From: Leucoraja ocellata | Taxonomy: Eukaryota | Assembly: GCA_036785375.1 (NCBI GenBank) | Contig: JAWMAR010003093.1 | Span: forward strand, 1-64,000 | Length of the DNA: 64,000 nt | Reading direction: 5' to 3' | Part shown: one piece after another, positions 23,201 through 54,568 of the stretch | Position numbering within the stretch: position 1 is the first letter of the stretch | How the letters are laid out: the number at the start of each line of letters is the position of its first letter | Program-made: the position numbers and the translations under genes | Notes under the pieces: generated by a model | Told to the model about the DNA's origin: nothing | Database searches by the model: none | The model's input: the letters and a program-made list of their open reading frames with translations, nothing else

Positions 23201-26200
23201 AAGACATATCCACCTGGTGAACTTGGCCAACACATTCCTAAGTATTCATAATGTGAGTGTTAATAATAAATAGATTTTGGACTAAATCGACTAAACCTGG
23301 TGTTTTTATTCCAGTATTGAAATAAGTTGCGCAACTTCTGGGGCAGATAAATCCTCGGTAACCCGTCATGGTCAATGTGTATCTGCAACAACAGAGGTGC
23401 AGCTGTAGAAACGCTGCCGAATATGACAGTGCCCCAATGCCTTATTTCATCGAATCTGCTTTTTAACATTAGGACCGAACTCTCTCTTCAGTACATGCAT
23501 GTATTTTTATTGCTAATATTATGCCAATCTCCGTTCAGTCACCATTCAAATACACTTTACTGATTGCACCTGGTGAATTCCGTTTTGTAGAAAAATAAAT
23601 AGCCTTGAACATTAAACTTATTTTTCGCCTTACAACCGTTGCCTTGCCGCTGGAGATTTATTTTATTTTCTGTGCAATTGTACATGTTCAGTATCTGCGG
23701 TATTTTGTATTTGATTAAACTACGCCCTATTGCAGCTGGTCCAAATTCGGCGCATGTTCTGCTCTATAAGCCAAACATGCAGGTTTCAGCCATTGCCTGA
23801 AAATAAAAACTTCGTTTAAGAGCAGGCACAATCACTATTCACAATCACTGCACCTCTTCGGACTTCCTGTTAGCCATTGCGAAGTTAATATCAAACTTCC
23901 TAAACCTGGTCCAGACTCTGTCTGTTTTAGAACTTAGAACATAGAACATACAGCAAAAAACTGTTCAGTTTAGTTTATGGCCACATGTACCCAGGTACAT
24001 TGAAAAGCGTGCAATCCTGTCAGCAGAAAGACAACACATGATTATAATCGAGCCATTCGCAGTATTATAGATACATGATAAGGGAACATGGTTTAATGCA
24101 AGGTGAAACCAGCATAGCCCGATCAAACATTGTGCTAGGGTCAGCATTTAGATGGATCAGTTGAAGAACAGATTCTTAGTTCACAATGGTCGTGTCGACC
24201 CGATACCAAGAGCAGCTCCGATCTACCTACGCGTGACCAATATCCTTCCATTCCCTGCAGATTCATATATGCATCCAAACTATTTTACATTCTACTATCG
24301 TATCCGCCTTAACGAGCAGCGCGTTATAAACACTCGCCATACTTTGTCTAAAACGTTGCGCCGCACATTTTCTTTAAATGTTGCCCTTCTATAGCATAAA
24401 GCTGTACCCTCTTGTATACATTGTTTCCATTCTGGGCCAATCAAAGTTCTGACAATCTACCGGGTCTCATAAGTTAACATAACTCAACCAGGTCTCCCCG
24501 CAATCTCCGACGTTTCAGAGGGATAAAAATCCAAATATGGCCAATCTCTCCCTGTATCTAATACCCGCTAATCCAGCCACCATGCGCAACTGAGCAACTG
24601 CGGCTGTAAAACTCGCTGTTCTTATTAATTTCGCCATCTTGCTGAATTGGCAAAGTCATTCACTAATGGCCTTGTTGCCGGTCACCAGTTTGTGCAGCGT
24701 TGTAGTTTAGTTAATTTACATTAGTTTGGTGGAGTTAAAGTAACCTAAACAAATACAATTACAAAAACAATACTAAACAAAAAAACACAAATGAATGACC
24801 AGGTACACTATATCCACTGCCTCTCCCTTGTCCATTTTCCTACTACCATCCTTAAACAAAATGCAGAAGATTAGTCAAGTATTATGTCCCCTTCGTAAAT
24901 CCATGCTGACTCGGACCGATCCTGTTACTGCTATTCAAATGTGCCGCTATTTCGTCTTTTATAATTGATTCCAGCATCTTCCCCACCACCGATGTCAGGC
25001 TAACTGGTCTATAATTCCCTGTTTTATCTCTCCCGACTTTCTTAAAAAGTTGGAAAACATTAGTTACCCTCCAATCCACAGGAACTGACCCTGAATCTAT
25101 GGAACATTGGAAAATTATCACCAATGCAGCCACAATTTCTAGAGCCATTTCCTTAAGTACCCTGGGATGCAGACTATCAGGCCTTGGGGCTTTATCAGCC
25201 TTCGGTCCCATCAGTCAACCCAACACCATTTCATGCCTGATGTGGATTTCCTTCAGTTCCTTCGTTAACCCAGATCCCCTGGCCACTACTACATCAGGAA
25301 AATTGTTTGTATCCCCCTTAGTGAAGACGGATCCAAAGTAACTGTTCAACTCGTCTGCCATTTTCTTGTTCCCCATAATAAATTTACTTTTTTCAGTCTT
25401 CTTGGACCCAGTCTTCAAGGATGTAGTTGAGGCAGGTACTGTCGCAACGTTTAAGAAATAATGCGACAGGTACATGGATAAGATATGTTCAGAGGAATAT
25501 GGCCACTCGTAGGCAGGTGGGGTGTGCAGATGGGGTGCAATGGTCATCGTGGGCAGGTTGTGCCGGAGGACTATTTTTCACGATGTATGACACTAGAACT
25601 CTATGCCAAGATGGAAGAACAACTTCACTTTCCGCTTGTGCAAGGCACATGTTACTGGAGTTAACATCCGAGTGTTCAACGTTGCTAAATCTCTCTTTCT
25701 GCTCATTTGGAAGAAAATTTGGAAGGCCCTGTTTCTGTGCTGTGTAACATGCAACTACCGCTTACAGTGAGAGTTGGTTCAATATACCTGCCCCCCCCCC
25801 CCCCCCCCCCCGTGAGGGAGAGTATCCGCTGCGTCCCTTTAAATATTTACCGTCTTATTTTATACTCCCGTCCTCTTTTAGAGACCTACATCAGAGGAAC
25901 ACATTAAAATATTTCAACTGATCACCTTGTCATATTTTAATTCTGCATAACTCCTCATGGTTTTATTCGCTGCTGAGAGATACAGTTTCTGCATTCTGCA
26001 GTCCATCTCATAATTCACACTGTCCAATATTTGTACCATTCGTGCGAGGACAGTTGCATATTCCCTAGTTTAAATTGATCCTTAATAAATTATTTCGAAA
26101 AATAATATCCCTCCTCCTGTGGTGTACTGCTCTGTGAAGTTTTTGTCTGTGAATTGCTTAGGTCGAGTGCAGCAAACATGACATTTGTTTCTTTGGTCAA

Positions 26201-27072
26201 GACTTTCTTCAGGATGATCTATCCCCAAACATTTACAGCCGGTGAGATTCTCCTTAACCGATTCAATCATCTTGTACATCAACATTCTTGATATCTCAAA
26301 CGGGTCATTGAATTGAGAAGATTTCGCCCTAATGTCTAGAATAACATCAAATGCTGTTCACCTCTGTGTTTTATGAATGAACACTTTATTTCTTTAAAGA
26401 TAATCTGTTGATCAAGAATATTTCTAGCCGCTGTTTATTTCCACTCAGTTATCACGTTACACATTATTTTCGCCTATTCTTTACTTCATGAAGTGGCAAC
26501 AGTTGAAATACATTAATGCTGCTGTTGTAGCTGAATTGTATACGATGTCGTCTAGAAGGTTCCCTGTGGTTTACATCATTTAGACCCTGCCAAAAAATGA
26601 TTATCTTTCCGTTTGAAAGGCAGCTACACGGATAATGCAAGATGAAATTATTAATGGGTGCATATTAAATGATGGGAACGGTGTCTGGAAAATGCATTGC
26701 AAATTCGACAAGTAATATACTGTATTACATCGTAGCTTGTGTGCATAAATGATACCTGACACGAATTTTGCTGCATCTGTGTGCCTCGCGTTAAAAGTTA
26801 AAAATAGAATGTTCACTCGTATTTTACAGTTCGTTTGTTCTGTTGGTGCTCAGCTGGTGCCTGAGTAGTGAGCGGTCGCATAATGAGTTTGATCGCTTTG
26901 CATCACATGGGAGCAAACTATTTGTTCAACGGTCCACAATAAATGTCCGCGGGGAGGTGAACGCACGCAGTCCTTAAGTTGTTTCTAAGAATATAAATAT
27001 AGCGCTATTTGACTTCTCACTTTGACTCCTATAAGTTTTGCACTGCATAACTGCGGACGGCTTGGAGGAAAA

Positions 27073-29441
27073 ATGAGTTGGAAGCGGCATTTGGAAGTTG
27101 AATATTATTATTATCCAATTCTGGCAGCAATCGGAGTACCTGGTAGGTCAAGGGAACGCAGTAAGTGGGACTGAGACGTGGGATGATGTGTTGATAAAAA
27201 ACATTGTTAAAGGTAAAGTGTAAATAGTGTGCGAAACACGGGAATGCTAGACTGCATTCTTCAGGTTAGGGCGGTATTAACTAGAAAATGTTTGTTTAAG
27301 AAATTACTGCAGCTGCTGGAGATAATCGAATCTAGACAAAAATGCTGGAGAATTAGACAGCGGGTGAAGCGGCATCTAGGAAGCGAAAGAATAGGTGACG
27401 TGTCGGGTCGAGACTGATCAGTCTGAAGAAGGGTCTCGACCCGAAACGTCACCTATTCCTTTGTTAAGCCAATTGATCGTTGGTCGTTCATTGGATCTGG
27501 CACAGGTTAATTCTCTTCAGATTCAGGTTTAGGTGCATTGTTGTCATGTCTCTCCGGGAGCTGCAAAAAGCTATGGTTTGCAAGAAATCAAAATTAGATC
27601 AAATAATATTGAATAACAGTACAAACAATTCAATCTCAGTAACAGGTAGTGTAAAGGGGGAAATCGGAGTGCAGAGCGTAGTTCAAGTTTGGGAGCGCTC
27701 TGCAGCGTATCACATCCACAAAGCCCAATGTCCGCAAGGGGATAGAGGTGAAACGGCAATGCCCTGGCATATGGAAGATCGGCTCAGAAGCCTGAGAACA
27801 GAGGGGAAAGAGCTGTTCTGCAGTCTGGTGGAGCGAGCTTTAAGCCTTCTCCATTTTCTGCCCGACGAGAGCAGGAAGTAGAAGTAATGAGCGGGGTGAA
27901 ACATGTCTCCGTTTCCAAGGGATTGTGAAGTGCGAACGCAGTCAACAGTGCGGAGTCGATTTCGTGATATGGACCCGGCGTCTTCCAGAACCCTGTGCAA
28001 TTTATTCTTTATGGGGCATAGATGGCCGCACAACAAGCTTTGTGCGGCACCGTTGTTGAGCATTATTGTGGAAGGGTGTTACCACTAATTCTCTCGGTTT
28101 ATTCTTTAGGAAGTTGAGTATCCATTCGCAAGCTGGTGCACTGATCGATGGGCTCTGGGGTTTATCAATGGGTTTGGATGGGAGTAGTGTTGAAGGCAAG
28201 TTCTCCAGCGGAGATTGGGAATCCGACTTTCGTCTCCTTGTTGCCCGGCTGTTCCCGGGAAGGGTTTAGGTCCAGGACGACGGCGTCTGATGCGGACATG
28301 TTGCTGCAATATGCAGTCTGCGGTGCATCACGGGTGTCTGGGAGACAGCTCACGCTACCTGCGTAGACCGCTGCTAATTAATCCGCACAGCTCCTTGGCC
28401 AGCACCCAGGTTTGCATGTGGGCAGTTTCTTTCGAACAAATAAGCAAAGCGTAACCCAAGTTTGACCCCCGCCTCCAAATTTGCATCGCGTGTCCATTAC
28501 ATGTAACGAGTTTCCTCTTTTCTACACCACCAGTGAACTTGCTGGCGATTGTGATCCTGTCGCGCAGAAATTGTGGTCTCTCCAAATGCACCACTCGGTA
28601 CCTGGTGGCCATGGCGACTGTGGACCTCACGGTGATCGTCTGCGAAGTGATATTACATCGGATTGCCGACCTTTACTGGGTGAACACATTCCTCTTACAC
28701 AATACTGTGTGCAGGTCCATTATGTTCCTCGCTCCCGCGGCCGTTGCCTGTTCTGTTTGGCTCACGGTCGCTTTCACATTTGATCGCTTTGTGGCCATTT
28801 CCACTCAGAATCTGAGAACCAGATACTGCACCGAGAGAACCGCGCTGGTGGTTTTAGTCACCCTAACTGCGTTCTTCTGTTTACAGAACGTCCCCTGGCC
28901 TTTTGCGTACATTTATTATCTCAGGGATCAGCAGGGTATACAGTGGGGTTGCCAAATACGATATCAGTTTTATAGCCTATCCTCGTGGATAGCATTTTCC
29001 TGGGCTCAACAGCTGCTAGTCCCAGTCATTCCATTTTGTTTGATTATGATGATGAACGTGCTCACAGTCAGACGCATTTTAGTGGCCAGTCGTGTCCGCA
29101 GAAAACTCCGCGATCTCAGTGGTGAGGACCCCGAGATCGCAAACCGTAGACGGTCCGTAATTTTACTCCTTGCAATCTCCAGCAGTTTTATGCTGCTCTG
29201 GGGCACAACTGTAGTATATTTCGTTTTCTATCGAATTACGAATGCATTTATGTTCAGGGGGTTGATGAACCGATTTGCAACATTTGAACAAACTGGAATT
29301 CTGCTACAACTGTTGAACACCTGCACAAACACGCTCATTTACACCGTGACCCAGAGGATGTTCAGAGAGCAGCTGTACCAGGTACTCGTGTACCCCTTCA
29401 CCCTAACTGTAAGTTTAATAAAATCGAGAAACCGAGTGTAA
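27073..29441 (+). CDS. GPR139-like GPCR, copy 2; exon 1 27073-27142, exon 2 28534-29441; ~325 aa
   Basis: Same exon 1 peptide with gt donor at 27143, caccag acceptor ending at 28533, open 7TM frame (ORF 28533..29441). Confidence 0.92.
27423..27450 (+). ncRNA. Minimal hammerhead-ribozyme-like motif (Penelope pLTR-derived) in the GPCR copy 2 intron
   Basis: CUGAAGA-A-GGGUC(UC)GACCC-GAAA-C-GUC. Equivalent motifs at 12505-12532 (core mutated), 41821-41848, 61529-61502 (-) and 5297-5324. Confidence 0.6.
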
Positions 29442-30146
29442 AGTAACATTACATTACTAATCCCACCGTGAGTCAGTGCAGAAACTAGGTAATGAAGGAG
29501 TTTTGTCTCAAAGTTTTCCGCATCAATTTTCAAAAACATAGCTGAGAAATACATTCTGAACGCGTCCCCTGCACTGGAATGTACATTTGGCCATCTATTT
29601 AACATGCAACACGGGCGCGTTGTTCAAAGTGCCCAATGGGAAGGGCGGCCACGTGGAACGAGTGTTATGTTGTACTGGAGCAGACCTCCAATGATTCCGG
29701 AATTGAGCCTCGCCGTTAACTGTCTCCACCCTCCTTTGAATCCAGTGGCAACGTCTCCAGCACGCAATGAAAACAGACATAGAGTTATGGTTCTAAACAT
29801 TGCATGCTCCATTACTGTACAATTCTTTGAGCCGTTCCATGGTTACGTATGTAAATGCCCGGTGCACCAATGTGTTTAATAAAATTCTTGTAGCAACATT
29901 TACGTTAGTGAGAGTTCTATTTTATATTTGTTTCTCGCACTGAATGTAATGCCTCATTGCTTCTTACAGAAGCCTTCGGCTTTCAGTACAATTAGTAATT
30001 CTGCACCAGATGCAGTCAAAGGTAGTGGGTGCCGTTCAAACAAGTTGGCATTACTAACTATATATTTTTTAATGGAAGCAGAGTGTCACAAGCTAGTGTG
30101 CAGTAGAGGGCTGTAAGGTGAGTAAGTACAATTCTTCCTGCAACAT

Positions 30147-30655
30147 TTGAATTCAATTCAGTTCAATTCAACTTTACTGTCATTGCACAGATACAAGTAC
30201 GGGTACAACGAAATGCAGTTTAGCGTCAGTCCGTAGTAAAAGTGCAACATAGAAATAAAAATACAGAATAAGCAAACAATGTGGACGGAGAGACTGGAGA
30301 AATCTATCGGCGGGACTTGGAGTTCAGCAATGTGATAGTGTTGTTGTAGAAGCTGTTCCTCATCCTACTACTACGAGCCCGAGGCTCCTGTACCGCCTCC
30401 CTCATGGGAGGTGGGCAAACAGTCCATGGTTAGGGTGGGAGGGGTCTTTGATGAACTTCCCGGCCCGTCTCAGACACCGTTTTCGGTGCAGGGCATCCAT
30501 GGCAGGGAGCGGGGCACCGATGATGTACTGAGAGGTTTTAACCACCCGTTCTAGTGCCTTCCGGTCCGCTACGGTGCAACTGCTGTACCATACCGTGAAG
30601 CAGGTGGTCAGGATGCTTTCGATGGTACAGCGGTAAACGTTGGTCAGGATTTGTC
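30147..30655 (-). mobile_element. Rex1/L2-type LINE 3' fragment, (TTGAA)n tail
   Basis: Reverse complement gives YRCTIESILTTCFTVWYSSC...RKALERVVK; unique to this copy. Confidence 0.8.
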
Positions 30656-31747
30656 CGACTTTACATTACGTTAATGAGAGTTCCATTTTATATTTGTTTT
30701 TCGCACTGAATGTAATGCCTCGTTGCTTCTTACAGAGCCTTTCGGTTTTCAGTACAATTAGTAATTCAGTACCAGATGCAGCCAAAGGTAGTGAGTGGGT
30801 GTTATTCATACAAGTTGGCATTACTAATTATATTTTTAATGCAAGCAGTGTGTAACAAGCTAGTGTCCAGTAGGGGGCGGTAAAGTGAGTAAGTTCTCCT
30901 GTGTGGTAAGAGATGCTGAATCGATTTGCATTAATGTCCCACCTCCATTGATACAGCGCTGACGCTGGAGCTCTGCCTATTGGAGATTCGAGTGAGTGCT
31001 CACAGTCGGATGTATCTCCTCCTGCAGCGCAAGGAAATGTGAGAAATTAATTAATTTATTTTCTTCACCGATGGCGGCTGAGATTTGTATACCTCCAAAT
31101 TTGAGTTGAGTACTCTCTTTCCAAATCCTCCGCTCCCGACGCGGTAATGATTACATTTTTACATATTCAGATTGACATTTTCCCTCTCGAGGCCGAAAAT
31201 ACCTTCGCTGAACATGTTATGCTTTATTTCTCGACATTACTGATTAAAGTTTAAAACAAAATCAAAAGCCTGAATTGAAAACGACTATCTTCAACTGATG
31301 ACGTCACAATGGCTCGGCTAGCAGTGATCAGCTTCACTTACGTTCGGGAACGGCTTGAGTTGGGGGACCACACCTCCTGTGGGGGCTACGGGTAGGGAAC
31401 GGGTGCGTTGGAGGATCAGACCCTATCGCAGCCTCTCATAACTTTACATACCTCAACCAGATCTTCCTGCAATCTCCGACATTCCAGAGGGAAAGAATCC
31501 AAATATGACCAATCTCTCCCTGCACCGCTAATCCAGCCACCACTCCGGTAAATGAGCAACAGCGACTCTAAAACACGGTGTACTTAGTAAATGTGTCCAT
31601 CTTGCTGCATTGGCAAAGACATTCACTAATGGCTTTGCTACTGGTCACCAATTAGTACAGCGTGCTAGTTTATTTAGTTTATATTAGTTCTTGATCTGCG
31701 TGCATAGGGTAGACTGTCAGAACTTTGATTTTCCCAACGGTCGGTTC

Positions 31748-32965
31748 TAACCTGGATGGCTGGACTGGCATATGTTGAAAGAATGGAGCGACTGAGCTTG
31801 TATACACTGGAGTTTAGAAGGATGAGAGGGCATCTTATTGAAACATATAATGTTATTGAGTGTTTGGACACGATAGAGGCAGGAAAATAGTTCCCGATGT
31901 TGGGGGAGTCCAGAACCAGGGCCACTGTTTAAGAATAAGCGGTAAGCCATTTAACCATATAAGCATATAACAATTACAGCACGGAAACAGGCCATCTCGA
32001 CCCGTCTAGTCCGTGCCGAACACGTATGCTCCCCTAGTCCCATATACCTGCGTTCAGACCATAACCCTCCATTCCTTTCCCGTCCCTATAACTATACAAT
32101 TTATTTTTAAATGATAAAAACGAACCTGCCTCCACCACCTTCACTGGAAGCTCATTCCACACTGCCACCACTCTCTGAGTAAAGAAGTTCCCCTTCATGT
32201 TACCCCTAAACTTCTGTCCCTTAATTCTCAAGTCATGTCCTCTTGTTTGAATCTTCCCTACTCTCAGTGGAAAAAGCTTATCCACGTCAACTCTGTCTAT
32301 CCCTCTCATCATTTTAAAGACCTCTATCAAGACCCCTCTTAACCTTCTGCGCTCCAAAGAATAAAGCCCTAAATTGTTCAACCTTTCTCTGTAACTTAGT
32401 TGCTGAAACGCAGACAACATTCTAGTAAATCTCCTATGTACTCCCTCTATTTTGTTGACATCCTTCTTATAATTAGGCGACCAAAATTGTACCCCATACT
32501 CCAGAATTGGCCTCACCAATGCCTTGTACAATTTTAACATTACATCCCAACTTCTATACGCAATGCTCTGATTTCTAAAGGCCAGCACACCAAAAGCTTT
32601 CTTTACCACCCTATCTACATGAGATTCCACTTTCAGGAAACTGTGCACAGTTATTCCCTGATCCCTCTGTTCACCTGCATTCTTCAATTCCCTACCATTT
32701 ACCTTGTACGTCCTATTTAGATGTAGATGCGGAAACAAATATTCACACCGTGTGGTGAGTATGTGGTATTCTGTGCCTCAGGGTGTCGGTTCTCTGTATA
32801 CTGTCAAGAGAGAGCTGGAGAGGGCTCTTAAAAATATCGGAGTCAGCGGATATGAGGAGAATGCAGGAACGGGGTACTGATTGGGGATGATCAGCCATGA
32901 TCACATTGAATGGCGGTGTTGGCTCGAAGGGCCGAATGGACTACTGCTGCACATATTGTCTATTC
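31748..32965. mobile_element. CR1 3' end (+) interrupted by a CR1 3' fragment (-, ~31953-32720)
   Basis: ORF 32034..32738 LYKALVRPILEYGVQFWSP...; paralog at ~45490-46710. Confidence 0.85.
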
Positions 32966-33276
32966 AAAGGAAGCTAATCAGCTTTTTTCCATCTCCGTCC
33001 TGTCTGCAGTATCATCTCTCTCTGCTTCCAGACCCATAAACTAATTTATTGCACAAACACATGTGTTACTTTTTAAGCTAGGGGGGCTCGACTGTGGCAA
33101 GTAAATTAACAGGCACAATCCTCGGCAACGTGCAGGATCGTTTCGTTGAACACCTCCGCTCAATTCGCCTCCAACGTGTCCAATCCCTTAATAATCTCTT
33201 ATGTTTCAAAAATATCTCCTCTCATCCTACTAAATTCCAGTGTATACAAGCCCAGCCGCTCCATTATATTCACATA

Positions 33277-35088: not shown

Positions 35089-35089
35089 T

Positions 35090-43842: not shown

Positions 43843-46800
43843 CATTACATTACTGATCCCTCCGTGAGTCAGTGTAAACACTAGGTAATGAAGGAGTTTT
43901 CTCTGAAATCATTCCGCATCAATTTTCAAAGAAATAGTTGAGAAATAGAATCCGAACGCGTCGCCTGCACTGGAAAGCACATTTGGCCATCTATTTAACA
44001 TGCGACACGGGCGCGTTGTTCAAAGTGCCCAGTGGGGAGGGCGGCCATGTTTAACCGAGTTCTATGTTGTACTGGAGCAGACCTCCAATGATTCGGGAAT
44101 TGAGTCTCGCCGTTAACTGTTTCCACCTTCCTTTGAATCGAGCGGCAACGTCTCCAGCGCGCAATGAAAACAGACATAGAATTATGGTCCTAAACATTGC
44201 ATGCTCCATTACTCTACAATTCTTTGAGACGTCCCATGGTTACGTATGTAAATGCCCAGTGCACAAATGTGTTTAATAAAATTCTTGCTGCAACATTTAC
44301 GTTAATGAAAGTGCGATTTTATATTTGTTTCTCGCACTGAATGTAAAGCCTCGTTGCTTCTTCCAGAGGCTTTCGGTTTTCAGTACAATTAGTAACTCTG
44401 CACCAGATGCAGCCAAAGGTACTGGGTGCTATTCATACAAGTTGGCATTACTAACTATATTTTTAATGCAAGCAGTGTGTAATAAGCGAGTGTCCAGTAG
44501 AGGGCGGTAAAGTGAGTAAGTTCACCTGTGTGGTAAAGATATGCTGAATCTATTTACATTAATGTCCCACCTCCATTGATGCAGCGCCGATGCTGGAGCT
44601 CTGCCTATTTTAGATTCGAGGGAATGCTCAGAGAGTCGGATTTATCTCCTCCTGCAGGGCAAGGAAATGTGGGAAATCCATTAATTTATTTTCCCCACCG
44701 ATGGCGGCTGTGATCTGTATAGCTCCAAATTTGAGTTGAGCAATCTCTCCCCAAATCCTCCTCTCCCGACGCGGTAACATTTACATTTTTACATATTCCG
44801 ATTGACGTTTTTCCCCTCGAGTCGGAGACACCTTCACTGAACATTTTATGCTTTATTTCTTGACTTATTACTGATTAAAAGTAAGTAAGAAGTTTAAAAA
44901 CGTCAAAATAATTTGACTTTAAATCGACCAGCTGCTTAATGGCACGGCTAGCAGTGAACAGCGTCCCTGAAGATTTCATCCTATATTTCACGTTATTCGC
45001 GATTAAAACATTAAAATTGTCAACTTTCACAATATTGTTTACATATTCTGGCCCACATTTATCCCCTCCAGGCAGAGAGCACCTTCGCTGAACATGTGAT
45101 GCTTTATTTTTCGGCATTACTGATTAAAGTTTTTAAAAATCAAATTGCTGTGAAAATTAAAACGGCTAGCTGCAACTGATGACGTCACGATGGCTCGGCT
45201 AGCAGTGATCAGCTTCACATTCCAGAGGGAAAGAATCCAAGTATGACCAATCTCTCCCTGCACCACTAATCCAGCCGCCATTCCGATAAATGAGCAACTG
45301 CGGCTCTAAAACACGCTGTTCTTATTAAATGTGTCCATCTTGCTGAATTGGCAAATACATTCCCTAATTGCTTTGCTACTGGTCACCAATTAGTACAGCG
45401 TGCTAGTTTAGTTAGTTTACATTAGTTCTTGATATGCGTGGATAGGGTAGACTGTCAGAAATTTGATTTTCCCAACGGTCGGTTCTAACCGGGATGGCTG
45501 GACTGGCATATGTTGAACGAATCGAGCGACTGAGCTTGTATACACTGGAGTTTAGAAGGATGAGAGGGCATCTTATTGAAACATATAATGTTATTGAGTG
45601 TTTGGACACGCTAGAGGCAGGAAAATTGTTCCAGATGTTGGGGGAGCCCAGAACCAGGGCCACTGTTTAAGAATAAGGGGTAAGCCATTTAACCATATAA
45701 CCATATAACCATATAACAATTACAGCACGGAAACAGGCCATCTCGACCCGTCTAGTCCGTGCCGAAAACGTATGCTGCCCTAGTCCCATATACCTGCGTT
45801 CAGAGCATAAATCTCCATTCCTTTCCCGTCCATATAACTATGCAAGTTATTTTTAATTTATAAAAACGACCTGCCTCCACCACCTTCACTGGAAGCTCAT
45901 TCCACACTGCCACCACTCTCTGAGTAAAGAAGTTCCCCCTCATGTTACCCCTAAACTTCTGTCCCTTAATTCTCAAGTCATGTCCCCTTGTTTGAATCTT
46001 CCCTACTCTCAGTGGAAAAAGCTTATCCACGTCAACTCTCTCTATCCCTCTCATCATTTAAACACCTCTATCAAGACCCCCCTTAACCTACTGCGCTCCA
46101 ATGAATAAAGCCCTAACTTGTGCAGCCTTTCTCTGTAACTTAGTTGCTGAAACCCTGGCAACATTCTAGTACTCCCTCTATATCTCCTCTGTACTCCCTC
46201 TATTTTGTTGACATCCTTCTTATAATTAGGCGGCCAAAATTGTACACCACACTACAGAATTTGGCCTCACCAATGCCCTGTACAATTTTAACATTACATC
46301 ACAACTTCTATACTTAATGCTCTGATTTCTAAAGGCCAGCACACCAAAAGCTTTCTTTACCACCCTATTTATATGAGATTCCACTTTTAGGAAACTGTGC
46401 ACAGTTATTCCCTGATCCCTCTGTTCACCTGCATTCTTCAATTCCCTACCATTTACCGTGTACGTCCTATTTAGATGTAGATGATGAAACAAATATCCAC
46501 ACAGTGTGGTGAGTATGTGGTATTCTCTGCCTCAGGGTGTCGGTTCTCTGGATACTGTCAAGAGAGAGCTGGAGAGGGCTCTTAAAAATATCGGAGTCAG
46601 GGGATATGAGGAGAATGCAGGAACGGGATACTGATTGGGGATGATCAGCCATGATCACATTGAATGGCGGTGTTGGCTCGAAGGGCCGAATGGACTACTG
46701 CTGCACATATTGTCTATTCAAAGGAAGCTAATCTGCTTTTTTCCATCTCCGTCCTATCTGTAGTATCTTCTCTCTCTGCTTCCAGACCCATAAACTAATT

Positions 46801-47029
46801 TATTGCACAAACACATGTGTTACTTTTTAAGCTAGGGGGGCTCGACTGTGGCAAGTAAATTAACAGGCGCAATCCTCGGCAACGTGCAGGATCGTTTCGT
46901 TGAACACCTCCGCTCAATTCGCCTCCAACGTGTCCAATCCCTTAATAATCTATTATGTTTCAAAAATATCTCCTCTCATCCTACTAAATTCCAGTGTATA
47001 CAAGCCCAGCCGCTCCATTATATTCACAT

Positions 47030-47935
47030 ATTCAGATTCAGATTCAAATTCAGATTCAGATTCAACTTTAATTGTCATTGTCAGTGTACAGTACAGAGAC
47101 AACGAAATGCAGTTAGCATCTCCCTGGAAGAGCAACATAGAATACGATTCCAATAAATAAATCTATTTACATGCATACAGTCGTGGTGTTTTTCCTGTGG
47201 GAGGAGTGTCCGGGCGGGTGGAAGGGGTGGGGGTGACCGAGGTACATTGTTGAGTAGTGTGACAGCCGCAGGGAAGAAGCTGTTCCTGGACCTGCTTTTC
47301 CGGCAAAGGAGAGACCTGTAGCGCATCCCGGATGGTATGTGGGTAAACAGTCCATGGTTGCGGTGAGAGCAGTCCTTGGTGATGCTGAGCGCCCTTCGCA
47401 GACAACGTTTGCTTTGGACAGACTCAAGGGACGGGAGTGTGGAACCGGTGATGCGTTGGGCAATTTTCACCACCCTCTGCAGTGCTTTCCGGTCGGACAC
47501 AGAGCAGTTGACAAACCATACTGTGATACAGTTGGTAAGGATGCTCTCGATGGTGCAGCGGTAGAAGTTCACCAGAATCTGAGGAGACAGGTGGACCTTC
47601 TTCAGTCTCCTCAGGAAGAAGAGACGCTGGTGAGCCCTCTTGACCAGAGTTGAGATATTGTGGATCCAAGATAGGTCATCGGAGATGTTGACCCCCAGGA
47701 ACCTGAAGCTGGAAACACGTTCCACCTTGATGTGGATGGGGGTGCGCGTGGCGCCCCTAGACTTCCTGAAATCTACAATGAGCTCCTTGGTCTTCTTGGA
47801 GTTAAATACCCAGGTTGTTGTCAGCGCACCATGGTGCTAGGAGCTGGACCTCCTCCCTATAGGCCGACTCGTCATTGTTGCTGATGAGGCCAATCACCGT
47901 TGTATCATCTGCATACTTGATGATGGTGTTCAGTC
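47030..47935 (-). mobile_element. Rex1/Babar-type LINE 3' part (paralog of 33277-34215)
   Basis: ORF 47081..47725. Confidence 0.88.
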
Positions 47936-50615
47936 GTAAGTGAATCAGAATCTGAATCTGAATCAGAATGACCATATTTTGCTCATATACTCAATTACAC
48001 TTGTTATGAAGGCCTTTCTCCACTGCCTGCTGTATCTGCATACTTACTTTCAGTGGGTGATGTACAAGGACCCCAATTGATACACATCGCCTTCTCGGGA
48101 GCAAACGTTTCCTTCCCGTTCCAGTTAAATATTTCCCTTCTCGCCATAAAACCTAATTCCTCTGGTTCTTGATACTCCAACTCTGGGTAAAGTACAAGAT
48201 ACAAGATACATTTATTTGTCACATGTACCAGTTGGTACAGTGAAATGTGTGGTCACCATATAACCATACAATTAAATAAAGAACACAACACACGATAGAG
48301 TCCAACATAAAACATTCCCACACAGCAGAATCAAAGTTTCCCACTGTGATTCACGTGTAATTCACGTTGTCCAATCGATAATGATTTCATACACTCAGCC
48401 TCCTCCGCCCAATGAATATAGGCTCAAGATATCAAATGTCCGCCGTGGACACAGGCCCTTCGTCCCACATAATCTACGCATCCCAACGATCACCCCATAC
48501 AGTAGCACTGCACTACAAGCTGGAAACAAGTTACAATTTGCAGATGTTAAAAAAATACGCATTTCGAGTCTGAGAAGAATCCGGAGCACCCGGAGAAAAC
48601 CCAGGCAGTCATCAGAATCAGAATCGGAATCAGAATGCGGTTTATTGTCATTATTTATTTAGCTAATGCAAAGTCCTTTAGCCAAGCAGTTGCCTCTTGA
48701 TCTGCTGTATGAAGGGTGACAAGTCCTCCTTTGAGTCTTTGTTGAGGACATGCATCATTGTTTGCTGCTCACCACATGCACACCGTGAGGTTGGACTGCC
48801 ATTTAAACATAGGTTCAAACGCAATTACGTCCCTGCAGTCATAACAACAACAAAAAAAAAAAATTATCTCAATTGCACACAAACATCCATCACAGTGAAT
48901 CTCCAAACAACTCCTCACTGTGATGGGAGGCAAAAGTATTATGTCTTCCCTTCTCTGTCCTTTATTCTTCTTCCGCAGTCTAGCAGTCAAATTGCTGCAT
49001 CGAGCTGATCGAGGCTTTTGATGTTGGAGCCCCCGGGGGGCGATGGTAAGGACCGCGCCGCGTCGGGCGATAGAGAGTCCTGCTACGGGTCGATTTAAAC
49101 CCCTCGATTCGAGCGGGAGATGTTGCCGTTGCGCAAGCTCCGAAAAACGGTCTCCCGCCAGGGACCTGCGAGCTCCCGATGTTACCGCCCACAGGGTCGC
49201 AGCCGCGCGTCGCCACAGCGCTCCGCGCTCCGACGTCGGACCGCTCCGCGATGGTGAGTCCGCAGGGTGTGCGACTGGAGCCCCGGGGCGATTCCGATTG
49301 GACCCCGCCGGCTGCACGATGTTAGTCCCCAACGACAACGGAGACTCGACAGGGAAAAGGTCGAGTTCGAGTCCCCGTACAGGGAAGAGATTTAAAAGCC
49401 CCCCTTCCCCCGCCCCACACCCCCCCCCCCCCTGCAAACGTCCTCCCTCCACACACACAAACAGAGCTAATAAACCAAAACATACACCTAACAAGGCTAA
49501 AAGAAATAAAAGACAGACAGACCGTAGGGGCCGCTGCCGCGAGGCGCCGCCATTTTGTCCAAACGGGAGAATTTACTAAATCGTTACTGTCAGCACTGTA
49601 CTCAGGATCTAAACGAGACTCTGACAGTGTAATGCCCCTGTCCCACTTAGGAATTAGTTTACCTTCCGGTGGGTCTTCAGTGTAAGGGAGCAACTCTCCA
49701 GCTACGACACTATGCCGCCTAATTTATTCCTACACTGCTCAAACTATCCTTTTTGCGAAGTCCCTCGAGGGAGTATAGTAGAGCTATGATCTAGTGAAGG
49801 TGTTGTCATGTTGCTGTTGTGGAGGAATTCCCAGACTATAGCGATGCAGAGAAGTAATTCAGTACCGGCTCATGGAACAAAAACAGTAATTACTGCATTA
49901 AGGTATTTGCACATTTGTGCAGTCACCCATTGGGAAAGGCGCCAGGCGTATTCAAAGGGTTTAATTTTACTTACCTCACGGGCATATCCATCAGGGTATT
50001 TATTTTAGCAGTTACTGTAGCTATGCATCTGGTGTCTAGTGATATATCCAGCGACACAGATCTGGATTACTCAGCAAGGCCCAATGGTGAACTACCCATC
50101 TGCATTACTGCATCCGCCATTTGCGGTAAATAGTTTGGTTTATTGACTTCCTATTCTTCCCGCGTCCCGGACGATTTTTCTGCAATAAGTGAAGGCCAAT
50201 GACCACCTGAAATTAGAAAGTCTGCCAGGGTGTTGGTGAAGTGGAATTGGTTAACGTAATTGTGACAATTCCGGGCCAGCCAATCCTCCATCCAGTGACA
50301 ACCTAGTTTGTCTGATTAAAACATAAAATTCTGCCGTTATTAACCAGGTTACCCAGGACTGAGAGAGAATGAAACAGAACACACGTTTCAGATCTCTGGT
50401 CACATGTTATATCCCGCTGTCATAAGAGTTCTTGTAATTCTCTGCAGCTCGCGGCTAATGTTATGGAAACGGATTCCGGAGAAGCAGCTCACAGTTGGAA
50501 ACAATAAAACCACCAGGACACCTGCACACAATGAAAGCAAACCGACAACTGAGAAAGAAAAGGAAAGCAGGCACATCCTACCGCATGAGCGGAGCAGAGA
50601 GCAAGACAAAAGCGA

Positions 50616-50653
50616 TGTTTTTGTAAGGGGCTTAACTTGTTTCCATCACTGTG
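50616..50653 (-). promoter_or_regulatory. Recombination signal sequence of V2 (22-nt spacer)
   Basis: CACAGTG (50653-50647), 22 nt, ACAAAAACA (50624-50616). Identical to the V1 RSS. Confidence 0.93.
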
Positions 50654-51124
50654 CGCCACAGTGCGCAGTAATAGACTGCAGAGTCGCTGAGATCCAGCCC
50701 TGAGATACTCAAGCTGGTGAACTTAGTCGCGGTATTGAGCTCAATAGAGAAACGAGTGTCAGCGTATTGGGCCTTATCTTCATTGTTGCCGTTGTCTCTC
50801 GACACAGTAAACTCGGGCTGCATGCCTGGATATTGTCGGTACCAGAATAAAGCATATGCTGTCCATGTGGTATCATAGTTGCAGGTTAAAGTCACCGCTT
50901 CTCCTTTTGTCTTCGTCACCGAGGGCAGTGGCTGTGTGACAGATTCTCCGTGAACGGTGACTGTAAAATAAATATATTTAGATAGTAACAGATACCTGAG
51001 TGCTATAAAGTTGCACTTCTCAAGCCAAAATCTCACTGAGTAGGGCGAGGGGAACTGAAAATATTGATCCAGAATTACCTATCAGAAACGCTCCCCACAC
51101 GACACAGATGCCGAGGAAACGCAT
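50654..51124 (-). CDS. T-cell receptor alpha/delta-type V segment V2; leader exon 51124-51079, V exon 50960-50654
   Basis: Leader MRFLGICVVWGAFLI+G then gtaatt. V exon ...TCNYDTTWTAYALFWYRQ...DSAVYYCALW. 15 nt differences from V1 over the 307-nt V exon, counted by eye. Confidence 0.93.
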
Positions 51125-51747
51125 TTTGACCGTTCACTATGTACTAGCTGAGTTCGAAACTTGAAGAGACAAAAACTGGATCGCGTCTGCTGGTCTCCGG
51201 ATGTTCGCTGTCACTGCCATGTGCCCCCAGTGATGGAGTCAGAGATGTGGGTGGGCAGCGGGGTCTTAGCCAATTAAAATACACGTAGCCGGAATCCAGC
51301 TTCCCCCCGAGAGTATTCGCATCCGCTTGAATAAACCGTGATTGAGGAAGGCATATTTGTTCTTGTAACCGGTGGTGAAGGTGCGAAGCCTGAGATTGTT
51401 AAGCGAAATAATAATAGGTGCATATTCACAAATGGAATAGATCGGGTAAACTCACAGAGTCTCTTGGCCAGATTAGGTGGATCGAGAAACAGAGAACATA
51501 GATTCAAAGTGAGTGGGGAGTAGATTTAATAGAGACCTGAAGGGTAACTTTTTCATACAAAGGGGGCGGCGCTTGGAACGAGCTGCCGGAGGTAGTAGTT
51601 AAGGCAGGCATAATCGCAGGGTTTATGAAGAGCGTTGACATATACATGGATAGAACGGATGTTGAGGATATGGACGAAATGCATGCAGGTAGGACTAGTG
51701 AAGATGGAACATGTTGGCTGGTGTGGGCAATTTGGGCCGAAGGGTGT

Positions 51748-52283
51748 ACAGTGTCCTGGTGAGACCACACCTGGAGTATTGTGTACAGTTGTGGTCTCCT
51801 AATCTGAAGAAAGACATTCTTGTACAGAGAAGGTTCACCAGACTGATTCCTGGGATGTCAGGACTTTGATATGAAGAAAGACGGGATAGACTCGACTTGT
51901 ACGCGCTAGAATTTAGAAGATTGAGGGGAGATCTTATTGAAACTTACAAAATTCTTAAGGGGTTCGACAGATTAGATGCAGGAACCTTGTTCCCGATGTT
52001 GGGGAAGTCCAGAACAAGGGGTTACAGTTTAAGGATAAGGGGGAAATCTTTTAGGACCGAGATGAGGAAAACATTTTTCACACAGAGAGTGGTGAATCTC
52101 TGGAATTCTCTGCCACAGAAGGCAGTTGAGGCCAGTTCATTGGCTATATTCAAGAGGGAGTTAGAGGTGGCAGGTACAGGATACTGAGTTGGATGATCAG
52201 CCATGATCATATTGAATGGCGGTGCAGGCTCGAAGGGCCGAATAGCCTACTTCTGCACCTATTTTTATGTTTCTATGTTTCTA
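51748..52283 (+). mobile_element. CR1 3' end inserted only in B2
   Basis: ORF 51897..52187; absent at the paralogous site ~38112. Confidence 0.85.
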
Positions 52284-52466
52284 ACGGTGTGTTTCCACGC
52301 AGTAAGACTCTATGATGCCACGATTCTAAAAAGAAACACCACAGTATTAACGTCATCCGTCCAAAGGCTACGGGCAGATGTGCAGTCGCTTCGGCCGTGT
52401 GGAGAAAATGGGAATTATTACGATGTTTCGATGTATACATTGAGAAATGCACGTGATTTCTATACG

Positions 52467-53222
52467 AGTCAAGTCAAGTCAAGTCAAGTTTATTCGTCAC
52501 ATACACGTACGAGATGTCAGTGAAATGAAAAGTGCTGCGGCGTGTGATGTCCATGTCATATCCTCAGAGATGTGGACTCCCAGATATTTAAAAGAGTTCA
52601 CCCTATCCACAGTATCCCCATTTATGCTCAATGGCGTGTACGTCCTCGGATGATGTGCCCTCCTAAAGTCCATGATCAGCTACTTAGTTTTTTGATGTTC
52701 AATCGGAGGCTGTTGTCCTGACCCCAGAGTGCTAGATCAGCCACCTCCTCTCGGTCGGCCTTCTCATCGTTGTCTGAGATCCGGCCCACTACCACAGTGT
52801 CATCAGCAAACTTGATTATTGAGTTGGAGCTGAACCTAGCCACACAGTCATGTGTGTACAGGGAGTACAATGGGGGGCTGAGGACGCAACCCTGGGGCGA
52901 TCCTGTGCTCAGTGTGAGGGACTTCGATGTATTTCCTCCCATCTTGACTACCTGGGGCCTGGCGGTGAGAAAGTACAGGGCCCAGGCACACAGTGGGGTG
53001 TTGAGCCACAATTCTATTAGCTTCCCGGCCAGTCTATGAACAGCATCCTCACGTAGCCCCCCTTCTGGCTGTCCAGATGGGAGAGAGCGGTGTGCAAAAC
53101 CTGGGAGACCGCATCGTCCGTGGATCTGTTCGGACGGTATGCGAACTGTAACAGGTCTATGTTGCGAGGGAGGAAGGCGCAGATGTGTTTCTTCACCAGC
53201 CTCTCGAAGCATTTCATGAATA
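52467..53222 (-). mobile_element. Rex1-type LINE RT fragment inserted only in B2
   Basis: [11 protein letters not shown]...THDCVA...[12 protein letters not shown] and MKCFERLVK...[13 protein letters not shown]; (TTGAC)n tail; absent at ~38295. Confidence 0.88.
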
Positions 53223-53751
53223 CCGAGGAAAATAAGTAAATAAGTGAAGTAAATTACAAGCAAAGCCAGAATGATGTGATAGGAGCCATTTTCAATGAAT
53301 GTGTTCAGTTCCACTCCCCCACATCTGCCATGTTTTGGCATATGAAATTAATTCCTGAGGACCTCACCCCGCCGAGTCCACGCCGACCATCGATGACCCG
53401 ATCACTTTCGTTCCGTGTTATTTCACCTTTCCATCTATTCCTTACACACTTGGTGCATGTTTACAGAGGCCAATTAACCTAAAACAAACACACGTATTGG
53501 GGATACGGGAGGAAATCAGAGCACCTGGACGATACCTACACGGTCACAGCGAGACGGGAAAACTACACTCGGACATTACCCGAGTACAGGATTGATCCCG
53601 GGTGTCTGAAGCTTTGAGGCAGCAGCAGCTGCGCCACTGTGCCGACAAAACGTGTGATTTGTTTTTAAAAGCGTGCAGCTGGGTGATTGTTGAAATTTAA
53701 CCACAGCTAGCCGGCAAAATAGGTTTGTAATTTCCATGAGTTGCAGCAGTG

Positions 53752-53823
53752 TATCGAGTGGCCTAGTGATCTGCATTCTGCGCACCGACCGTTGCTGCCT
53801 GAATTCGGTTCGTGGTCAGGCAG
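53752..53823 (+). pseudogene. Decayed tRNA-Glu-derived sequence (paralog)
   Basis: Paralog of 38798-38869 with further substitutions. Confidence 0.65.
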
Positions 53824-54568
53824 TATGGCGGCATCTTTCTGTCTCCAGCGGCAACATTATTAGACCGCGCATCGTTCACTCTGTGTAGTTTCAGCGTCGC
53901 CTCAACCACGTGAACAGTCAGCAGCTCACAAACATTTAAAATAATATACTTATGCAAAATACATAAACATTATTGCTACCAACGGCTAACATTGCCATAA
54001 CCCCGACTGGTTCATGCAGCCAGGGGTCTCAGATTCAAATTAATATTGATATTCACATTCAAAATATATCTCCAAAATCGAAGAAAATATATACCAACAT
54101 TGGCCCATAAATAATATTTTCGAATATGCTAACTATACAACGTGTTGTCCATCATGGAAACAAACCACTGGAGATTGGACGATAATTGAAATGCACTCTC
54201 GCTCACCTGCTCGCGGAGTGCGGTGGATATCAGGGCAGTTGGGGAGGAGCAGCCATAAAGTGTGAAATCGCAACATTTGACTGGGTCTTTACATGGAAAC
54301 AGTTCCGCCTTCACTGAACTCGACTATGGGAAACACAACTGGGATTATTGTGAATTGTGGGAACAGTCATAGTGCGTCAATTCTTTGGATTTCGAAATAT
54401 ATAGTTTATTCGAGAAATAAATATGTACAATACATGATCCTTACAAAACCCCCATCCGACATTCTCGGAGGCTAAACATACATTCAATACTGTTTACACA
54501 AATTACACAATTTTACCTCCCACCTAAGGGGTCACAAATAACATTAGCAAATGTGCAGATGACACAAA

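What the first reader, a model, noticed from the sequence alone, without database searches (positions are those of the whole stretch)
25915..54400. A GPCR gene and a TCR V segment form one co-duplicated ~14 kb cassette
Seen: intact GPR139-like genes alternate with intact RSS-bearing TCR alpha/delta-type V segments (GPCR2+, V1-, GPCR3+, V2-), and the whole unit is tandemly duplicated. Established: non-TCR genes occur in or beside antigen-receptor loci (trypsinogens in mammalian TRB, olfactory receptors at TRA/TRD), and GPR139-like genes are expanded in chondrichthyan annotations. Inference: an orphan-GPCR repertoire is expanding in step with the V repertoire inside a rearranging locus. I do not know of a description of this pairing.
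Basis: partly seen in the sequence, partly recalled or inferred. Interest (0 to 1): 0.88.

Follow-up and report, generated by a model that had tools for sequence, protein, structure and literature searches.

The report
Skate receptor genes duplicated with TCR V segments
In this skate DNA, a gene for an orphan cell-surface receptor and a T-cell-receptor V segment were copied together as one 14 kb block, much as smell-receptor genes sit among T-cell-receptor V genes in mammals, and nothing yet shows that the two kinds of gene work together.

Summary
The window carries four intact two-exon class-A GPCR genes of the chondrichthyan 'GPR139-like' expansion: G1-G3 on +, G4 inverted. It also carries two intact TCR alpha/delta-type V segments on the - strand. 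Each V has a leader, a 118-nt intron, a V exon and an RSS: perfect heptamer, 22-nt spacer, 8/9 nonamer.

Unit 25908-39190 (G2+V1) is colinear with 40316-54145 (G3+V2) at 90-98% identity, so GPCR and V were copied in one tandem duplication.

'In step' is only partly true. A younger duplication (1-15120 / 16129-30041) copied a GPCR with a V-less spacer, giving 4 GPCRs to 2 Vs.

'Inside a rearranging locus' is untested. The window has no J or C. Four RNA runs of unknown tissue gave zero depth on V1. The tool for cross-species context was closed.

The GPCR ORFs are kept open by selection and vary mostly in extracellular loops.

Closest precedent: OR genes between TRAV1-1, TRAV1-2 and TRAV2 in mammals. 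My reading is co-amplification by linkage, a new variant of a known kind.

The scan's first readers noted the same interleaving on other pieces of this genome (unchecked). I found no paper describing it.

The parts
12156..12225 (+). G1 exon 1 (ATG, MSWKRHLEVEYYYYPILAAIGVP, first base of the next codon; donor gt follows)
   Evidence: tblastn with N-termini of homologues; sequence and donor read
13618..14531 (+). G1 exon 2 (rest of TM1 through the stop codon), 7tm_1
27073..27142 (+). G2 exon 1
28534..29441 (+). G2 exon 2, 7tm_1; a 1-nt deletion 15 nt before the stop changes only the last few residues
36945..36982 (-). V1 RSS: heptamer CACAGTG 36982-36976, 22-nt spacer, nonamer ACAAAAACA 36953-36945
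36983..37289 (-). V1 V exon (V-set, ends ...YYCALG)
37408..37453 (-). V1 leader exon (MRFLGICVVWGAFLT, then the first base of the next codon); the 118-nt intron is 37290-37407
41472..41541 (+). G3 exon 1; its ATG lies 4,018 bp from the V1 ATG, in divergent orientation
42929..43842 (+). G3 exon 2, 7tm_1
50616..50653 (-). V2 RSS; the 37 bases covered by the search pattern are identical to those of the V1 RSS
50654..50960 (-). V2 V exon (V-set, ends ...YYCALW)
51079..51124 (-). V2 leader exon
59162..60069 (-). G4 exon 2 (inverted copy; in-frame 6-nt deletion at the top of TM5). The 374-aa ORF up to 60286 reads into the intron.
61808..61877 (-). G4 exon 1
25908..39190 (.). Duplication unit U2 (G2 + spacer B with V1)
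40316..54145 (.). Duplication unit U3 (G3 + spacer B with V2), offset 14,408 bp from U2
1..15120 (.). Older-left unit (V-less spacer A + G1), repeated at 16129-30041 at 93-95% identity
54828..63721 (.). Inverted partial unit (part of spacer B + G4), 78-91% identical to the direct units; it abuts the N gap at 54569-54699

Best explanation
This is a LINE-rich stretch of a skate genome (closest named relative Leucoraja erinacea). A 4.3-kb core carrying a two-exon 'GPR139-like' class-A GPCR gene has been copied repeatedly by segmental duplication.

In two neighbouring 14.4-kb units, the spacer downstream of the GPCR also carries an intact TCR alpha/delta-type V segment on the opposite strand. That one tandem duplication therefore copied GPCR and V together.

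The likely mechanism is unequal crossing-over between repeats, and this step is inferred. The co-amplification is then a by-product of physical linkage. The precedents are OR genes lying between TRAV1-1, TRAV1-2 and TRAV2 in mammals, and trypsinogen genes in TRB. No functional link between the two gene kinds is needed.

Shown here:
- The gene models.
- The colinear duplication.
- The order of events: the inverted copy came first, then G+V, then G alone.
- Selection keeps the GPCR reading frames open, and change is concentrated in the extracellular loops.

Inferred:
- The Vs belong to the functional TRA/TRD V region.
- If J-C lies downstream of the Vs, at lower coordinates, a deletional V-J join from V1 would excise G1 and G2 and leave G3 upstream of the join.
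For: Gene models.

The RSS is far beyond chance: 2 matches against 0 in 100 shuffles.

U2 and U3 are colinear along the full unit at 90-98% identity. V1/V2 dS is 0.06 and G2/G3 dS is 0.07, so both fit the same event.

Noncoding distances give the order. G4 against the others is 0.096-0.104, G3 against G1/G2 is 0.082-0.084, and G1 against G2 is 0.050.

Spacers hold LINE reverse-transcriptase fragments.

Under neutrality, P(no stop in any of the four exon 2 ORFs) is about 0.003 and P(no frameshift) about 0.001.

Variable residues: extracellular loops 20 of 63, TM plus intracellular loops 25 of 211, Fisher p 4e-4.

The V's best single-domain PDB matches are TCR alpha and Vdelta1 chains. Its named homologues are TCR alpha or alpha/delta V regions.

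OR genes interspersed among TRAV genes in human, mouse and sheep: passages of PMC4574546.
Against: The window has no J or C, so locus membership is not shown.

V1 had zero RNA depth and G3 exon 1 about zero in 4 of 4 runs laid, while transposon pieces in the same stretch reached depths of hundreds to thousands. The tissues are hidden and the RNA runs carry a different organism code from the DNA holders, so this negative is weak.

dN/dS is high: 0.8 for the V pair and 0.42-0.96 for the GPCR pairs. Relaxed constraint is therefore not excluded for the youngest copies.

The V pair alone is too young for its intactness to prove function. It has about 15 differences, so about 0.6 stops would be expected.

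Unequal crossing-over is inferred and no breakpoints were mapped.
Confidence: 0.6

Rival explanations
1. Orphon V segments. The GPCR cluster lies outside the working TRA/TRD locus. It picked up a V segment once and has since carried it along in duplications, and these Vs never rearrange.
For: The window has no J or C and no V1 reads in four RNA runs. V1/V2 dN/dS is 0.8, and the pair is too young for its intactness to be informative. GPR139-like genes sit on many contigs in other species, so most of the family is clearly not in a TCR locus.
Against: Leader, splice sites, framework residues and RSS are all canonical in both copies, and the 37 RSS bases covered by the search pattern are identical. 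7 of the 9 amino-acid differences fall in or beside CDR1, CDR2 or the CDR3 base, and none in FR3. First-reader notes report the same interleaving on many other pieces of this genome, which fits a large V region better than one stray copy, but those notes are unchecked.
Confidence: 0.2
2. Functional coupling. GPCR and V are kept together because they share regulation (the divergent V1/G3 pair) or because the GPCRs act in T cells. V(D)J deletion would then set which GPCR copies a clone keeps or expresses.
For: V1 and G3 exon 1 are head-to-head 4 kb apart. GPCR variation is concentrated in the extracellular loops, as in receptor repertoires. The interleaving is reported repeatedly in this genome, in unchecked notes.
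Against: The 4-kb interval is partly filled with high-copy transposon pieces, so it is not a compact shared promoter. V2 has no such partner: the next GPCR, G4, is inverted and lies beyond a gap. G1 and G2 duplicated without any V. Neither gene showed expression.
Confidence: 0.07
3. Assembly artefact. The repeated units are uncollapsed haplotypes or a misjoin, and the true locus has one GPCR and one V.
For: An N gap sits exactly where the direct and inverted copies meet. The best DNA runs hold only about half of the sampled words.
Against: The units differ by 5-10% in noncoding DNA and by unit-specific insertions of hundreds of bases. That is far more than the 1.6% heterozygosity reported for the little skate (passage of PMC10115646). 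The four GPCRs differ at 59 of 304 protein columns.
Confidence: 0.05

Closest known systems
Olfactory receptor genes interspersed with TRAV genes at the 5' end of the mammalian TRA/TRD locus (human OR10G2 between TRAV1-1 and TRAV1-2, OR4E2 between TRAV1-2 and TRAV2; mouse Olfr1507-1509 between TRAV1 and TRAV2; sheep likewise). Source: passages of PMC4574546.
   Same: Class-A 7TM receptor genes of a multigene family lie between RSS-bearing alpha/delta-type V segments.
   Different: The GPCR family differs: here it is GPR139-like and two-exon, not an OR. In mammals there are two or three OR genes in conserved synteny at one end of the locus. Here the GPCR and the V are amplified together as a repeating unit, and the GPCRs outnumber the Vs. 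Whether the skate array lies in the TRA/TRD locus is not shown.
Trypsinogen genes embedded and tandemly duplicated within the mammalian TRB locus
   Same: A non-TCR multigene family is amplified by tandem duplication inside an antigen-receptor locus, with no known functional link.
   Different: The gene family and the locus differ. The trypsinogen repeats are not paired one-to-one with V segments as far as I recall.
Human GPR139 (PDB 7VUG, 9M42)
   Same: It is the best solved-structure match to the family profile: E 8e-20 over the whole 7TM, against 5e-15 for the next protein, CCR5. Both share the TM1 pattern YY..L..G.P.N, the motif DR[FY] and a TM7 N-x-x-x-Y motif that lacks proline.
   Different: The relationship is distant. 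A single-sequence search did not reach GPR139 at E<=0.001. GPR139 is not a multi-copy gene in mammals to my knowledge. Here there are hundreds of chondrichthyan paralogues in species-specific clades.
Chemoreceptor-type multigene families that evolve by birth and death (OR, TAAR, V1R, V2R)
   Same: Tandem arrays, species-specific clades, high dN/dS with frames kept open, and change concentrated on the extracellular side.
   Different: No expression in a sensory organ has been shown. No paper in the searched library treats this family as chemosensory.

Membership tests
TCR alpha/delta V gene segment (TRAV/TRDV) | Split leader: a short leader exon, a short intron, then the V exon | tested here: met
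   46-nt leader exon, 118-nt gt..ag intron and 307-nt V exon in both copies
TCR alpha/delta V gene segment (TRAV/TRDV) | V-set domain with the conserved Cys, the Trp of WYRQ, and YYC | tested here: met
   Pfam V-set E 4e-14 and 9e-15. The motifs LTC, FWYRQ and DSAVYYCAL align with those of other V regions.
TCR alpha/delta V gene segment (TRAV/TRDV) | RSS of the 23-spacer class directly 3' of the V exon | tested here: met
   CACAGTG, 22 nt, ACAAAAACA abuts the last V codon. 2 matches against 0 expected. The spacer is 22 nt, one short of the canonical 23.
TCR alpha/delta V gene segment (TRAV/TRDV) | Closer to TRAV/TRDV than to Ig, TRB or TRG V regions | tested here: met
   The best single-domain PDB chains are TRA (4mng_E), Vdelta1 (3omz_A) and TCR alpha chains. 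The informative names among homologues are TCR alpha or alpha/delta V. No formal tree against TRB/TRG/Ig V regions was built.
TCR alpha/delta V gene segment (TRAV/TRDV) | Lies upstream of TRA/TRD J and C on the same chromosome | not testable with these tools
   The window holds no J-type RSS or C exon.
TCR alpha/delta V gene segment (TRAV/TRDV) | Found joined to J-C in transcripts | tested here: inconclusive
   Zero depth over 36963-37562 in 4 of 4 RNA runs, with 1.1-1.9 billion letters read from each. Tissues are unknown, and the organism code differs from that of the DNA holders.
GPR139 (orthologue of the mammalian orphan receptor) | Rhodopsin-type 7TM domain | tested here: met
   7tm_1 in all four, covering profile positions 2-260 of 260
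GPR139 (orthologue of the mammalian orphan receptor) | GPR139 is the nearest characterised receptor | tested here: met
   Profile of 26 family members: GPR139 E 8e-20, next CCR5 5e-15. The single-sequence search found only CCK receptors at about 1e-4.
GPR139 (orthologue of the mammalian orphan receptor) | One-to-one orthology (single conserved gene) | tested here: not met
   632 homologues at E<=1e-5, nearly all chondrichthyan. The window copies form their own clade with two skate-like sequences (support 100/100), and sharks have species-specific clades. 'GPR139-like' is therefore a family label, not orthology.
GPR139 (orthologue of the mammalian orphan receptor) | Intron within TM1 at the same place as in the human gene | not tested
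   The skate genes have a phase-1 intron in TM1. The human gene structure is only recalled and was not checked.
Non-TCR genes embedded in a TCR V region | A non-TCR gene lies between two RSS-bearing V segments | tested here: met
   G3 (41472-43842) lies between V1 (36945-37453) and V2 (50616-51124)
Non-TCR genes embedded in a TCR V region | The V segments around it take part in V(D)J recombination | not testable with these tools
   See the two rows on J/C linkage and on transcripts

The most novel reading that the evidence does not exclude
The chondrichthyan 'GPR139-like' genes are an undescribed diversifying receptor repertoire, and part of it is built into the TRA/TRD V region. Because the GPCR genes lie between V segments, V-J deletion would somatically remove or reposition particular GPCR copies. 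Each T-cell clone would then carry, and perhaps express, a GPCR set tied to its V choice.
Probability: 0.05. Interest if true: 0.9.

Novelty: new variant of a known kind. Interest (0 to 1): 0.5.

Why it matters
If the array lies in the working TRA/TRD locus, skates would show a second and much larger case of 7TM receptor genes living among TCR V segments. This case arose by repeated co-duplication, not by conserved synteny at one edge of the locus.

That bears on how antigen-receptor V regions grow by segmental duplication that drags passengers along. It also raises the question of whether V(D)J deletion has side effects on embedded genes.

Separately, the GPCR family is very large in sharks and rays. 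Its reading frames are kept open by selection, and it varies on its extracellular face. I found no paper on it. Cartilaginous fishes are known for very small OR repertoires (recalled), so a candidate extra receptor repertoire would interest sensory biologists.

Tried and rejected
1. A single-exon GPCR model. The 374-aa ORF of G4 and the Logan protein P0001 start at 'MWAS...' upstream of TM1. I rejected this start. The same frame has stops in G1-G3, and the upstream DNA differs by 1-, 2- and 8-nt indels and ends in a splice acceptor. The true exon 1 lies 1.39 kb upstream.

2. Single-sequence PDB search for G3. It returned only CCK receptors at about 1e-4 and no GPR139. A 26-sequence profile was needed.

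As a substitute I compared contig lengths and accession numbers.
   - Only one elasmobranch TRAV-like protein turned up among the 120 rows listed. It is P0257 of Heterodontus francisci.
   - P0257 lies on a 59,489,666-bp contig. Two GPR139-like proteins, P0109 and P0120, lie on a contig of the same length.
   - The accession numbers are 178 and 312 apart.
   - This shows the same chromosome at most. Those two GPCRs also fall in the other main clade of the tree. I rejected it as evidence of adjacency.

4. RNA evidence. One read-laying run on 36963-42962 with 4 of the 12 raw-read RNA runs offered (X6, X10, X12, X13). V1 had zero depth and G3 exon 1 about zero. Only transposon pieces were covered. 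No conclusion on expression is possible.

5. More V, J or C exons.
   - An RSS scan with a strict heptamer and a nonamer matching at least 6 of 9 found only the two V RSSs.
   - tblastn with V1 at E<=10 gave nothing credible beyond V1 and V2.
   - tblastn with 154 V/TCR-like proteins at E<=1e-3 hit only V1 and V2.

6. Rfam at gathering scores gave 0 matches. Tandem Repeats Finder gave two 8-bp microsatellites only.

7. Literature.
   - Searches 17, 18 and 48 paired GPR139 with cartilaginous, shark, elasmobranch, chondrichthyan, Callorhinchus, skate and catshark.
   - Two searches covered TCR loci in sharks and skates.
   - No search returned a paper on the GPCR expansion or on GPCR/TCR-V interleaving in cartilaginous fishes.
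   - I read passages only, by the find mode, of PMC12294341, PMC10322711, PMC4574546, PMC5931798, PMC11979771 and PMC10115646.
Gene-family tables in the supplements of PMC10115646 or PMC11979771 might list this family.

8. The tree used 42 of the 120 listed homologues plus the four window copies. The 42 were P0001-P0033, P0035, P0040, P0041, P0048, P0051, P0062, P0106, P0109 and P0120. All other hits were left out by my choice. The root is the midpoint only.

9. The TM and loop boundaries used are my own rough assignment from the GPR139 alignment and a hydropathy plot.
Full report
WHAT IS THERE

The window has 131 N at 54569-54699 and is otherwise complete. It holds four open reading frames with a rhodopsin-type 7TM domain. 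Pfam 7tm_1 E-values run from 1e-15 to 1e-18, and each match covers profile positions 2-260 of 260:
- G1 13563-14531 on the + strand
- G2 28533-29441 on the + strand
- G3 42928-43842 on the + strand
- G4 59162-60286 on the - strand

Each ORF begins in the middle of TM1. The in-frame sequence upstream carries stop codons in G1, G2 and G3. Among the four copies it differs by indels of 1, 2 and 8 nt. It ends in a pyrimidine tract followed by cag, which marks it as an intron.

I searched the window with the N-termini of homologues. All four copies have a conserved first exon about 1.39 kb upstream. It consists of ATG, 23 codons (MSWKRHLEVEYYYYPILAAIGVP or a near variant) and one more base, followed by the donor g|gtaggt. 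With this two-exon model all four genes are complete, at 325-327 codons. Every search used exon 2 alone.

Two V-set exons lie on the - strand (Pfam E 4e-14 and 9e-15). Each has these parts:
- a 46-nt leader exon (MRFLGICVVWGAFL...)
- a 118-nt gt..ag intron
- a 307-nt V exon with the motifs LTC, FWYRQ and DSAVYYCAL
- directly after the last V codon, CACAGTG, a 22-nt spacer and ACAAAAACA

The heptamer-spacer-nonamer pattern occurs twice in the window, against none in 100 shuffles. The 37 bases it covers are identical in the two copies.

No further V, J or C exon was found:
- tblastn with V1 at E<=10 gave nothing credible elsewhere.
- 154 V or TCR-like proteins hit only V1 and V2 at E<=1e-3.
- The RSS scan found no 12-spacer signal.

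THE DUPLICATIONS

Self-comparison shows a 4.3-kb core holding both GPCR exons. It is present four times: 10821-15120, 25723-30041, 40316-44429 and, inverted, 63721-58577. Two kinds of spacer separate the cores.
- Spacer A (1-10411 and 16129-25719, 93-95% identical) has no V.
- Spacer B (about 30663-39190 and 44293-54145) carries V1 and V2.

A global alignment of 25723-40315 with 40316-54568 is colinear across the GPCR, the spacer and the V. Identity is 90-98% per 500 columns wherever the two align, and each unit has insertions of its own.

Noncoding distances of the cores give the order of events:
1. The inverted copy G4 split first, at distance 0.096-0.104 from the others.
2. Then G3 split from the ancestor of G1 and G2 at 0.082-0.084. 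This is the G+V duplication.
3. Then G1 split from G2 at 0.050. This duplication carried spacer A and no V.

The V pair (dS 0.06) and the G2/G3 pair (dS 0.07) fit the same event.

The inverted unit keeps part of spacer B up to the N gap. The stretch that would hold its V falls at the gap, which I left alone. The spacers contain LINE reverse-transcriptase fragments.

WHAT THE GENES ARE

The V. Its best single-domain matches among solved structures are a TRA chain (4mng_E), human Vdelta1 (3omz_A) and several TCR alpha chains. Higher-ranked rows are two-domain antibody constructs whose scores add up. The homologues with informative names are TCR alpha or alpha/delta V regions, and the closest is a Callorhinchus Ig-like protein at 49% identity. 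A V with a 23-class RSS fits TRAV/TRDV.

The GPCR. A protein search gave 632 hits at E<=1e-5 among 2124 candidates. Of the 120 listed, 115 are named 'G-protein coupled receptor 139' by NCBI or UniRef, and all named ones are from cartilaginous fishes. The best named hit is Leucoraja erinacea at 86% identity, and the next is Amblyraja radiata at 63%.

The label GPR139 is only a family label:
- G3 alone does not reach GPR139 among solved structures at E<=0.001.
- A profile of 26 family members puts GPR139 first, at 8e-20 against 5e-15 for CCR5.
- The alignment spans the whole 7TM. It shares the TM1 pattern, DR[FY] and a TM7 N-x-x-x-Y motif without proline.

In a tree of 46 rows the four window copies group with P0001 and the Leucoraja protein (support 100/100). 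This group is sister to an Amblyraja pair, and Heptranchias and Pristiophorus each have clades of their own. That is the pattern of a birth-and-death family.

ARE THE GENES ALIVE?

Over the four-copy tree (length 0.167 noncoding substitutions per site), neutral change would have put about 5.8 stop codons into the exon 2 frames, so P(none) is about 0.003. It would also have produced about 7 frameshifting indels in the coding sequence, so P(none) is about 0.001.

What is seen instead is no stop, one in-frame 6-nt deletion (G4), and one 1-nt deletion 15 nt before the stop of G2. So selection has kept the GPCR frames open.

Yet dN/dS between copies is 0.42-0.96. The 59 variable protein columns are concentrated in the extracellular loops, with ECL3 alone at 11 of 20. 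The extracellular loops hold 20 of 63 variable positions, against 25 of 211 in TM plus intracellular loops (Fisher p 4e-4). The C-terminal tail has 14 of 30. The loop boundaries are my own rough assignment.

The V pair differs at 9 of 101 residues:
- two in CDR1
- two in CDR2 and two just before it
- one at the CDR3 base
- three in FR1
- none in FR3

Its dN/dS is 0.8. With only about 15 nucleotide differences, its intactness proves nothing by itself.

IS IT A REARRANGING LOCUS?

I could not settle this. The window has no J or C.

The look-up of sequencing runs found three DNA-type holders (organism A) and, under the 'same species label', twelve raw-read RNA runs of organism B with tissues hidden.

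I laid four of those runs, from three studies, on 36963-42962 at 93% likeness. The stretch covers V1, the interval and G3 exon 1. Depth was zero over V1 in all four runs. It was at most 0.6 over the bin that holds G3 exon 1. Transposon pieces at 39363-40362 and 41763-41962 had depths of hundreds to thousands. With unknown tissues, and possibly a different species label, this is a weak negative.

The only indirect hint is a TRAV-like Heterodontus protein on a contig of the same length (59,489,666 bp) as two GPR139-like genes, with accession numbers 178 and 312 apart. That is no more than the same chromosome.

The scan's own first-reader notes report the same interleaving on other pieces of this genome. 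25 notes mention GPR139, and at least ten describe TCR V segments among the GPCRs. One note reports a J-alpha array on yet another piece. No note links GPCRs to a constant exon. These notes are unchecked leads. They make it less likely that the pairing is confined to this one duplication.

HOW IT MOST LIKELY WORKS

My reading has confidence 0.6. A repeat-rich V region grows by unequal crossing-over, and whatever lies in the unit is copied along with it. GPCR genes and V segments are therefore co-amplified when they share a unit (U2/U3), and not when they do not (G1/G2). No functional link is required.

The Vs point towards lower coordinates. If J-C lies that way, a deletional join from V1 would excise G1 and G2 and leave G3 upstream. 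That is an inference from the map, not an observation.

Rivals:
- Orphon Vs carried by a GPCR cluster (0.2).
- True functional coupling, for example through the divergent V1/G3 pair (0.07). The 4-kb interval is partly transposon, V2 has no such partner, and G1/G2 duplicated without a V.
- Assembly artefact (0.05). It is unlikely given 5-10% divergence and unit-specific insertions, against the 1.6% heterozygosity reported for the little skate (passage of PMC10115646).

COMPARISON WITH WHAT IS KNOWN

OR genes lie between TRAV1-1, TRAV1-2 and TRAV2 in human, between TRAV1 and TRAV2 in mouse, and likewise in sheep (passages of PMC4574546). Trypsinogen genes in TRB are a second precedent, which I recall and did not read.

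The skate case differs in three ways. The GPCR family is different. The GPCR and V are amplified as a repeating unit. The GPCRs outnumber the Vs.

No paper on either the family's expansion or the interleaving came up in five searches or in passages of six papers.

VERDICT

It is a new variant of a known kind, with moderate interest (0.5). Interest would rise if the array is shown to lie in the working TRA/TRD locus, or if the GPCR family proves to be a sensory or immune receptor repertoire.

Noticed in passing
window 54145-54828 (N gap 54569-54699): The direct unit U3 and the inverted unit that carries G4 meet at the assembly gap, which makes a large near-palindrome. The part of the inverted unit that would hold a third V falls at the gap. 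I did not fill it.
   Followed up: partly
window 39363-40362 and 41763-41962: High-copy transposon pieces between V1 and G3, and within the G3 intron, are heavily represented in all four RNA runs (depth hundreds to thousands, on both strands). Most reads are only 90-99% alike, so they come from other copies.
   Followed up: no
window 60070-60286 (-) and protein P0001: G4's long ORF and a Logan-derived protein both start at 'MWAS...' inside the intron. An automatic gene caller would give these genes a false N-terminus and miss exon 1.
   Followed up: yes
window about 37648-37672 (-) versus about 51296-51303 (-): A run of about 25 G lies roughly 200 nt upstream of the V1 start codon. It is only about 6 G long at the same place upstream of V2. 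Read laying flagged 37638-37679 as a skipped repeat.
   Followed up: no
window 33327-33971 (-) and 47081-47725 (-): Two 214-aa ORFs in spacer B match Pfam ALKBH8_N (E about 1e-14), and reverse-transcriptase fragments lie elsewhere in the spacers. I take them for the tail of a LINE ORF and not a host gene. This region is the best-conserved part of the unit (97-98% identity).
   Followed up: partly
all four GPCR exon 2 sequences, e.g. window 42929-43842: The family has DRF in place of DRY and NTLIY in place of NPxxY. Human GPR139 also lacks the proline in the TM7 motif.
   Followed up: partly
proteins P0003 and P0012 (Amblyraja radiata) versus the window clade: The nearest Amblyraja genes are only 62-63% identical to the window copies and sit on long branches (about 0.5 each). 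Another Leucoraja/Amblyraja pair in the same tree differs by only about 0.2-0.35. Either this subfamily evolves very fast or its true Amblyraja counterparts are not annotated.
   Followed up: no
window 3225-3272 and 63779-63854: Two 8-bp microsatellites (GTTATATG x6, GGCGGCGA x9.5).
   Followed up: no
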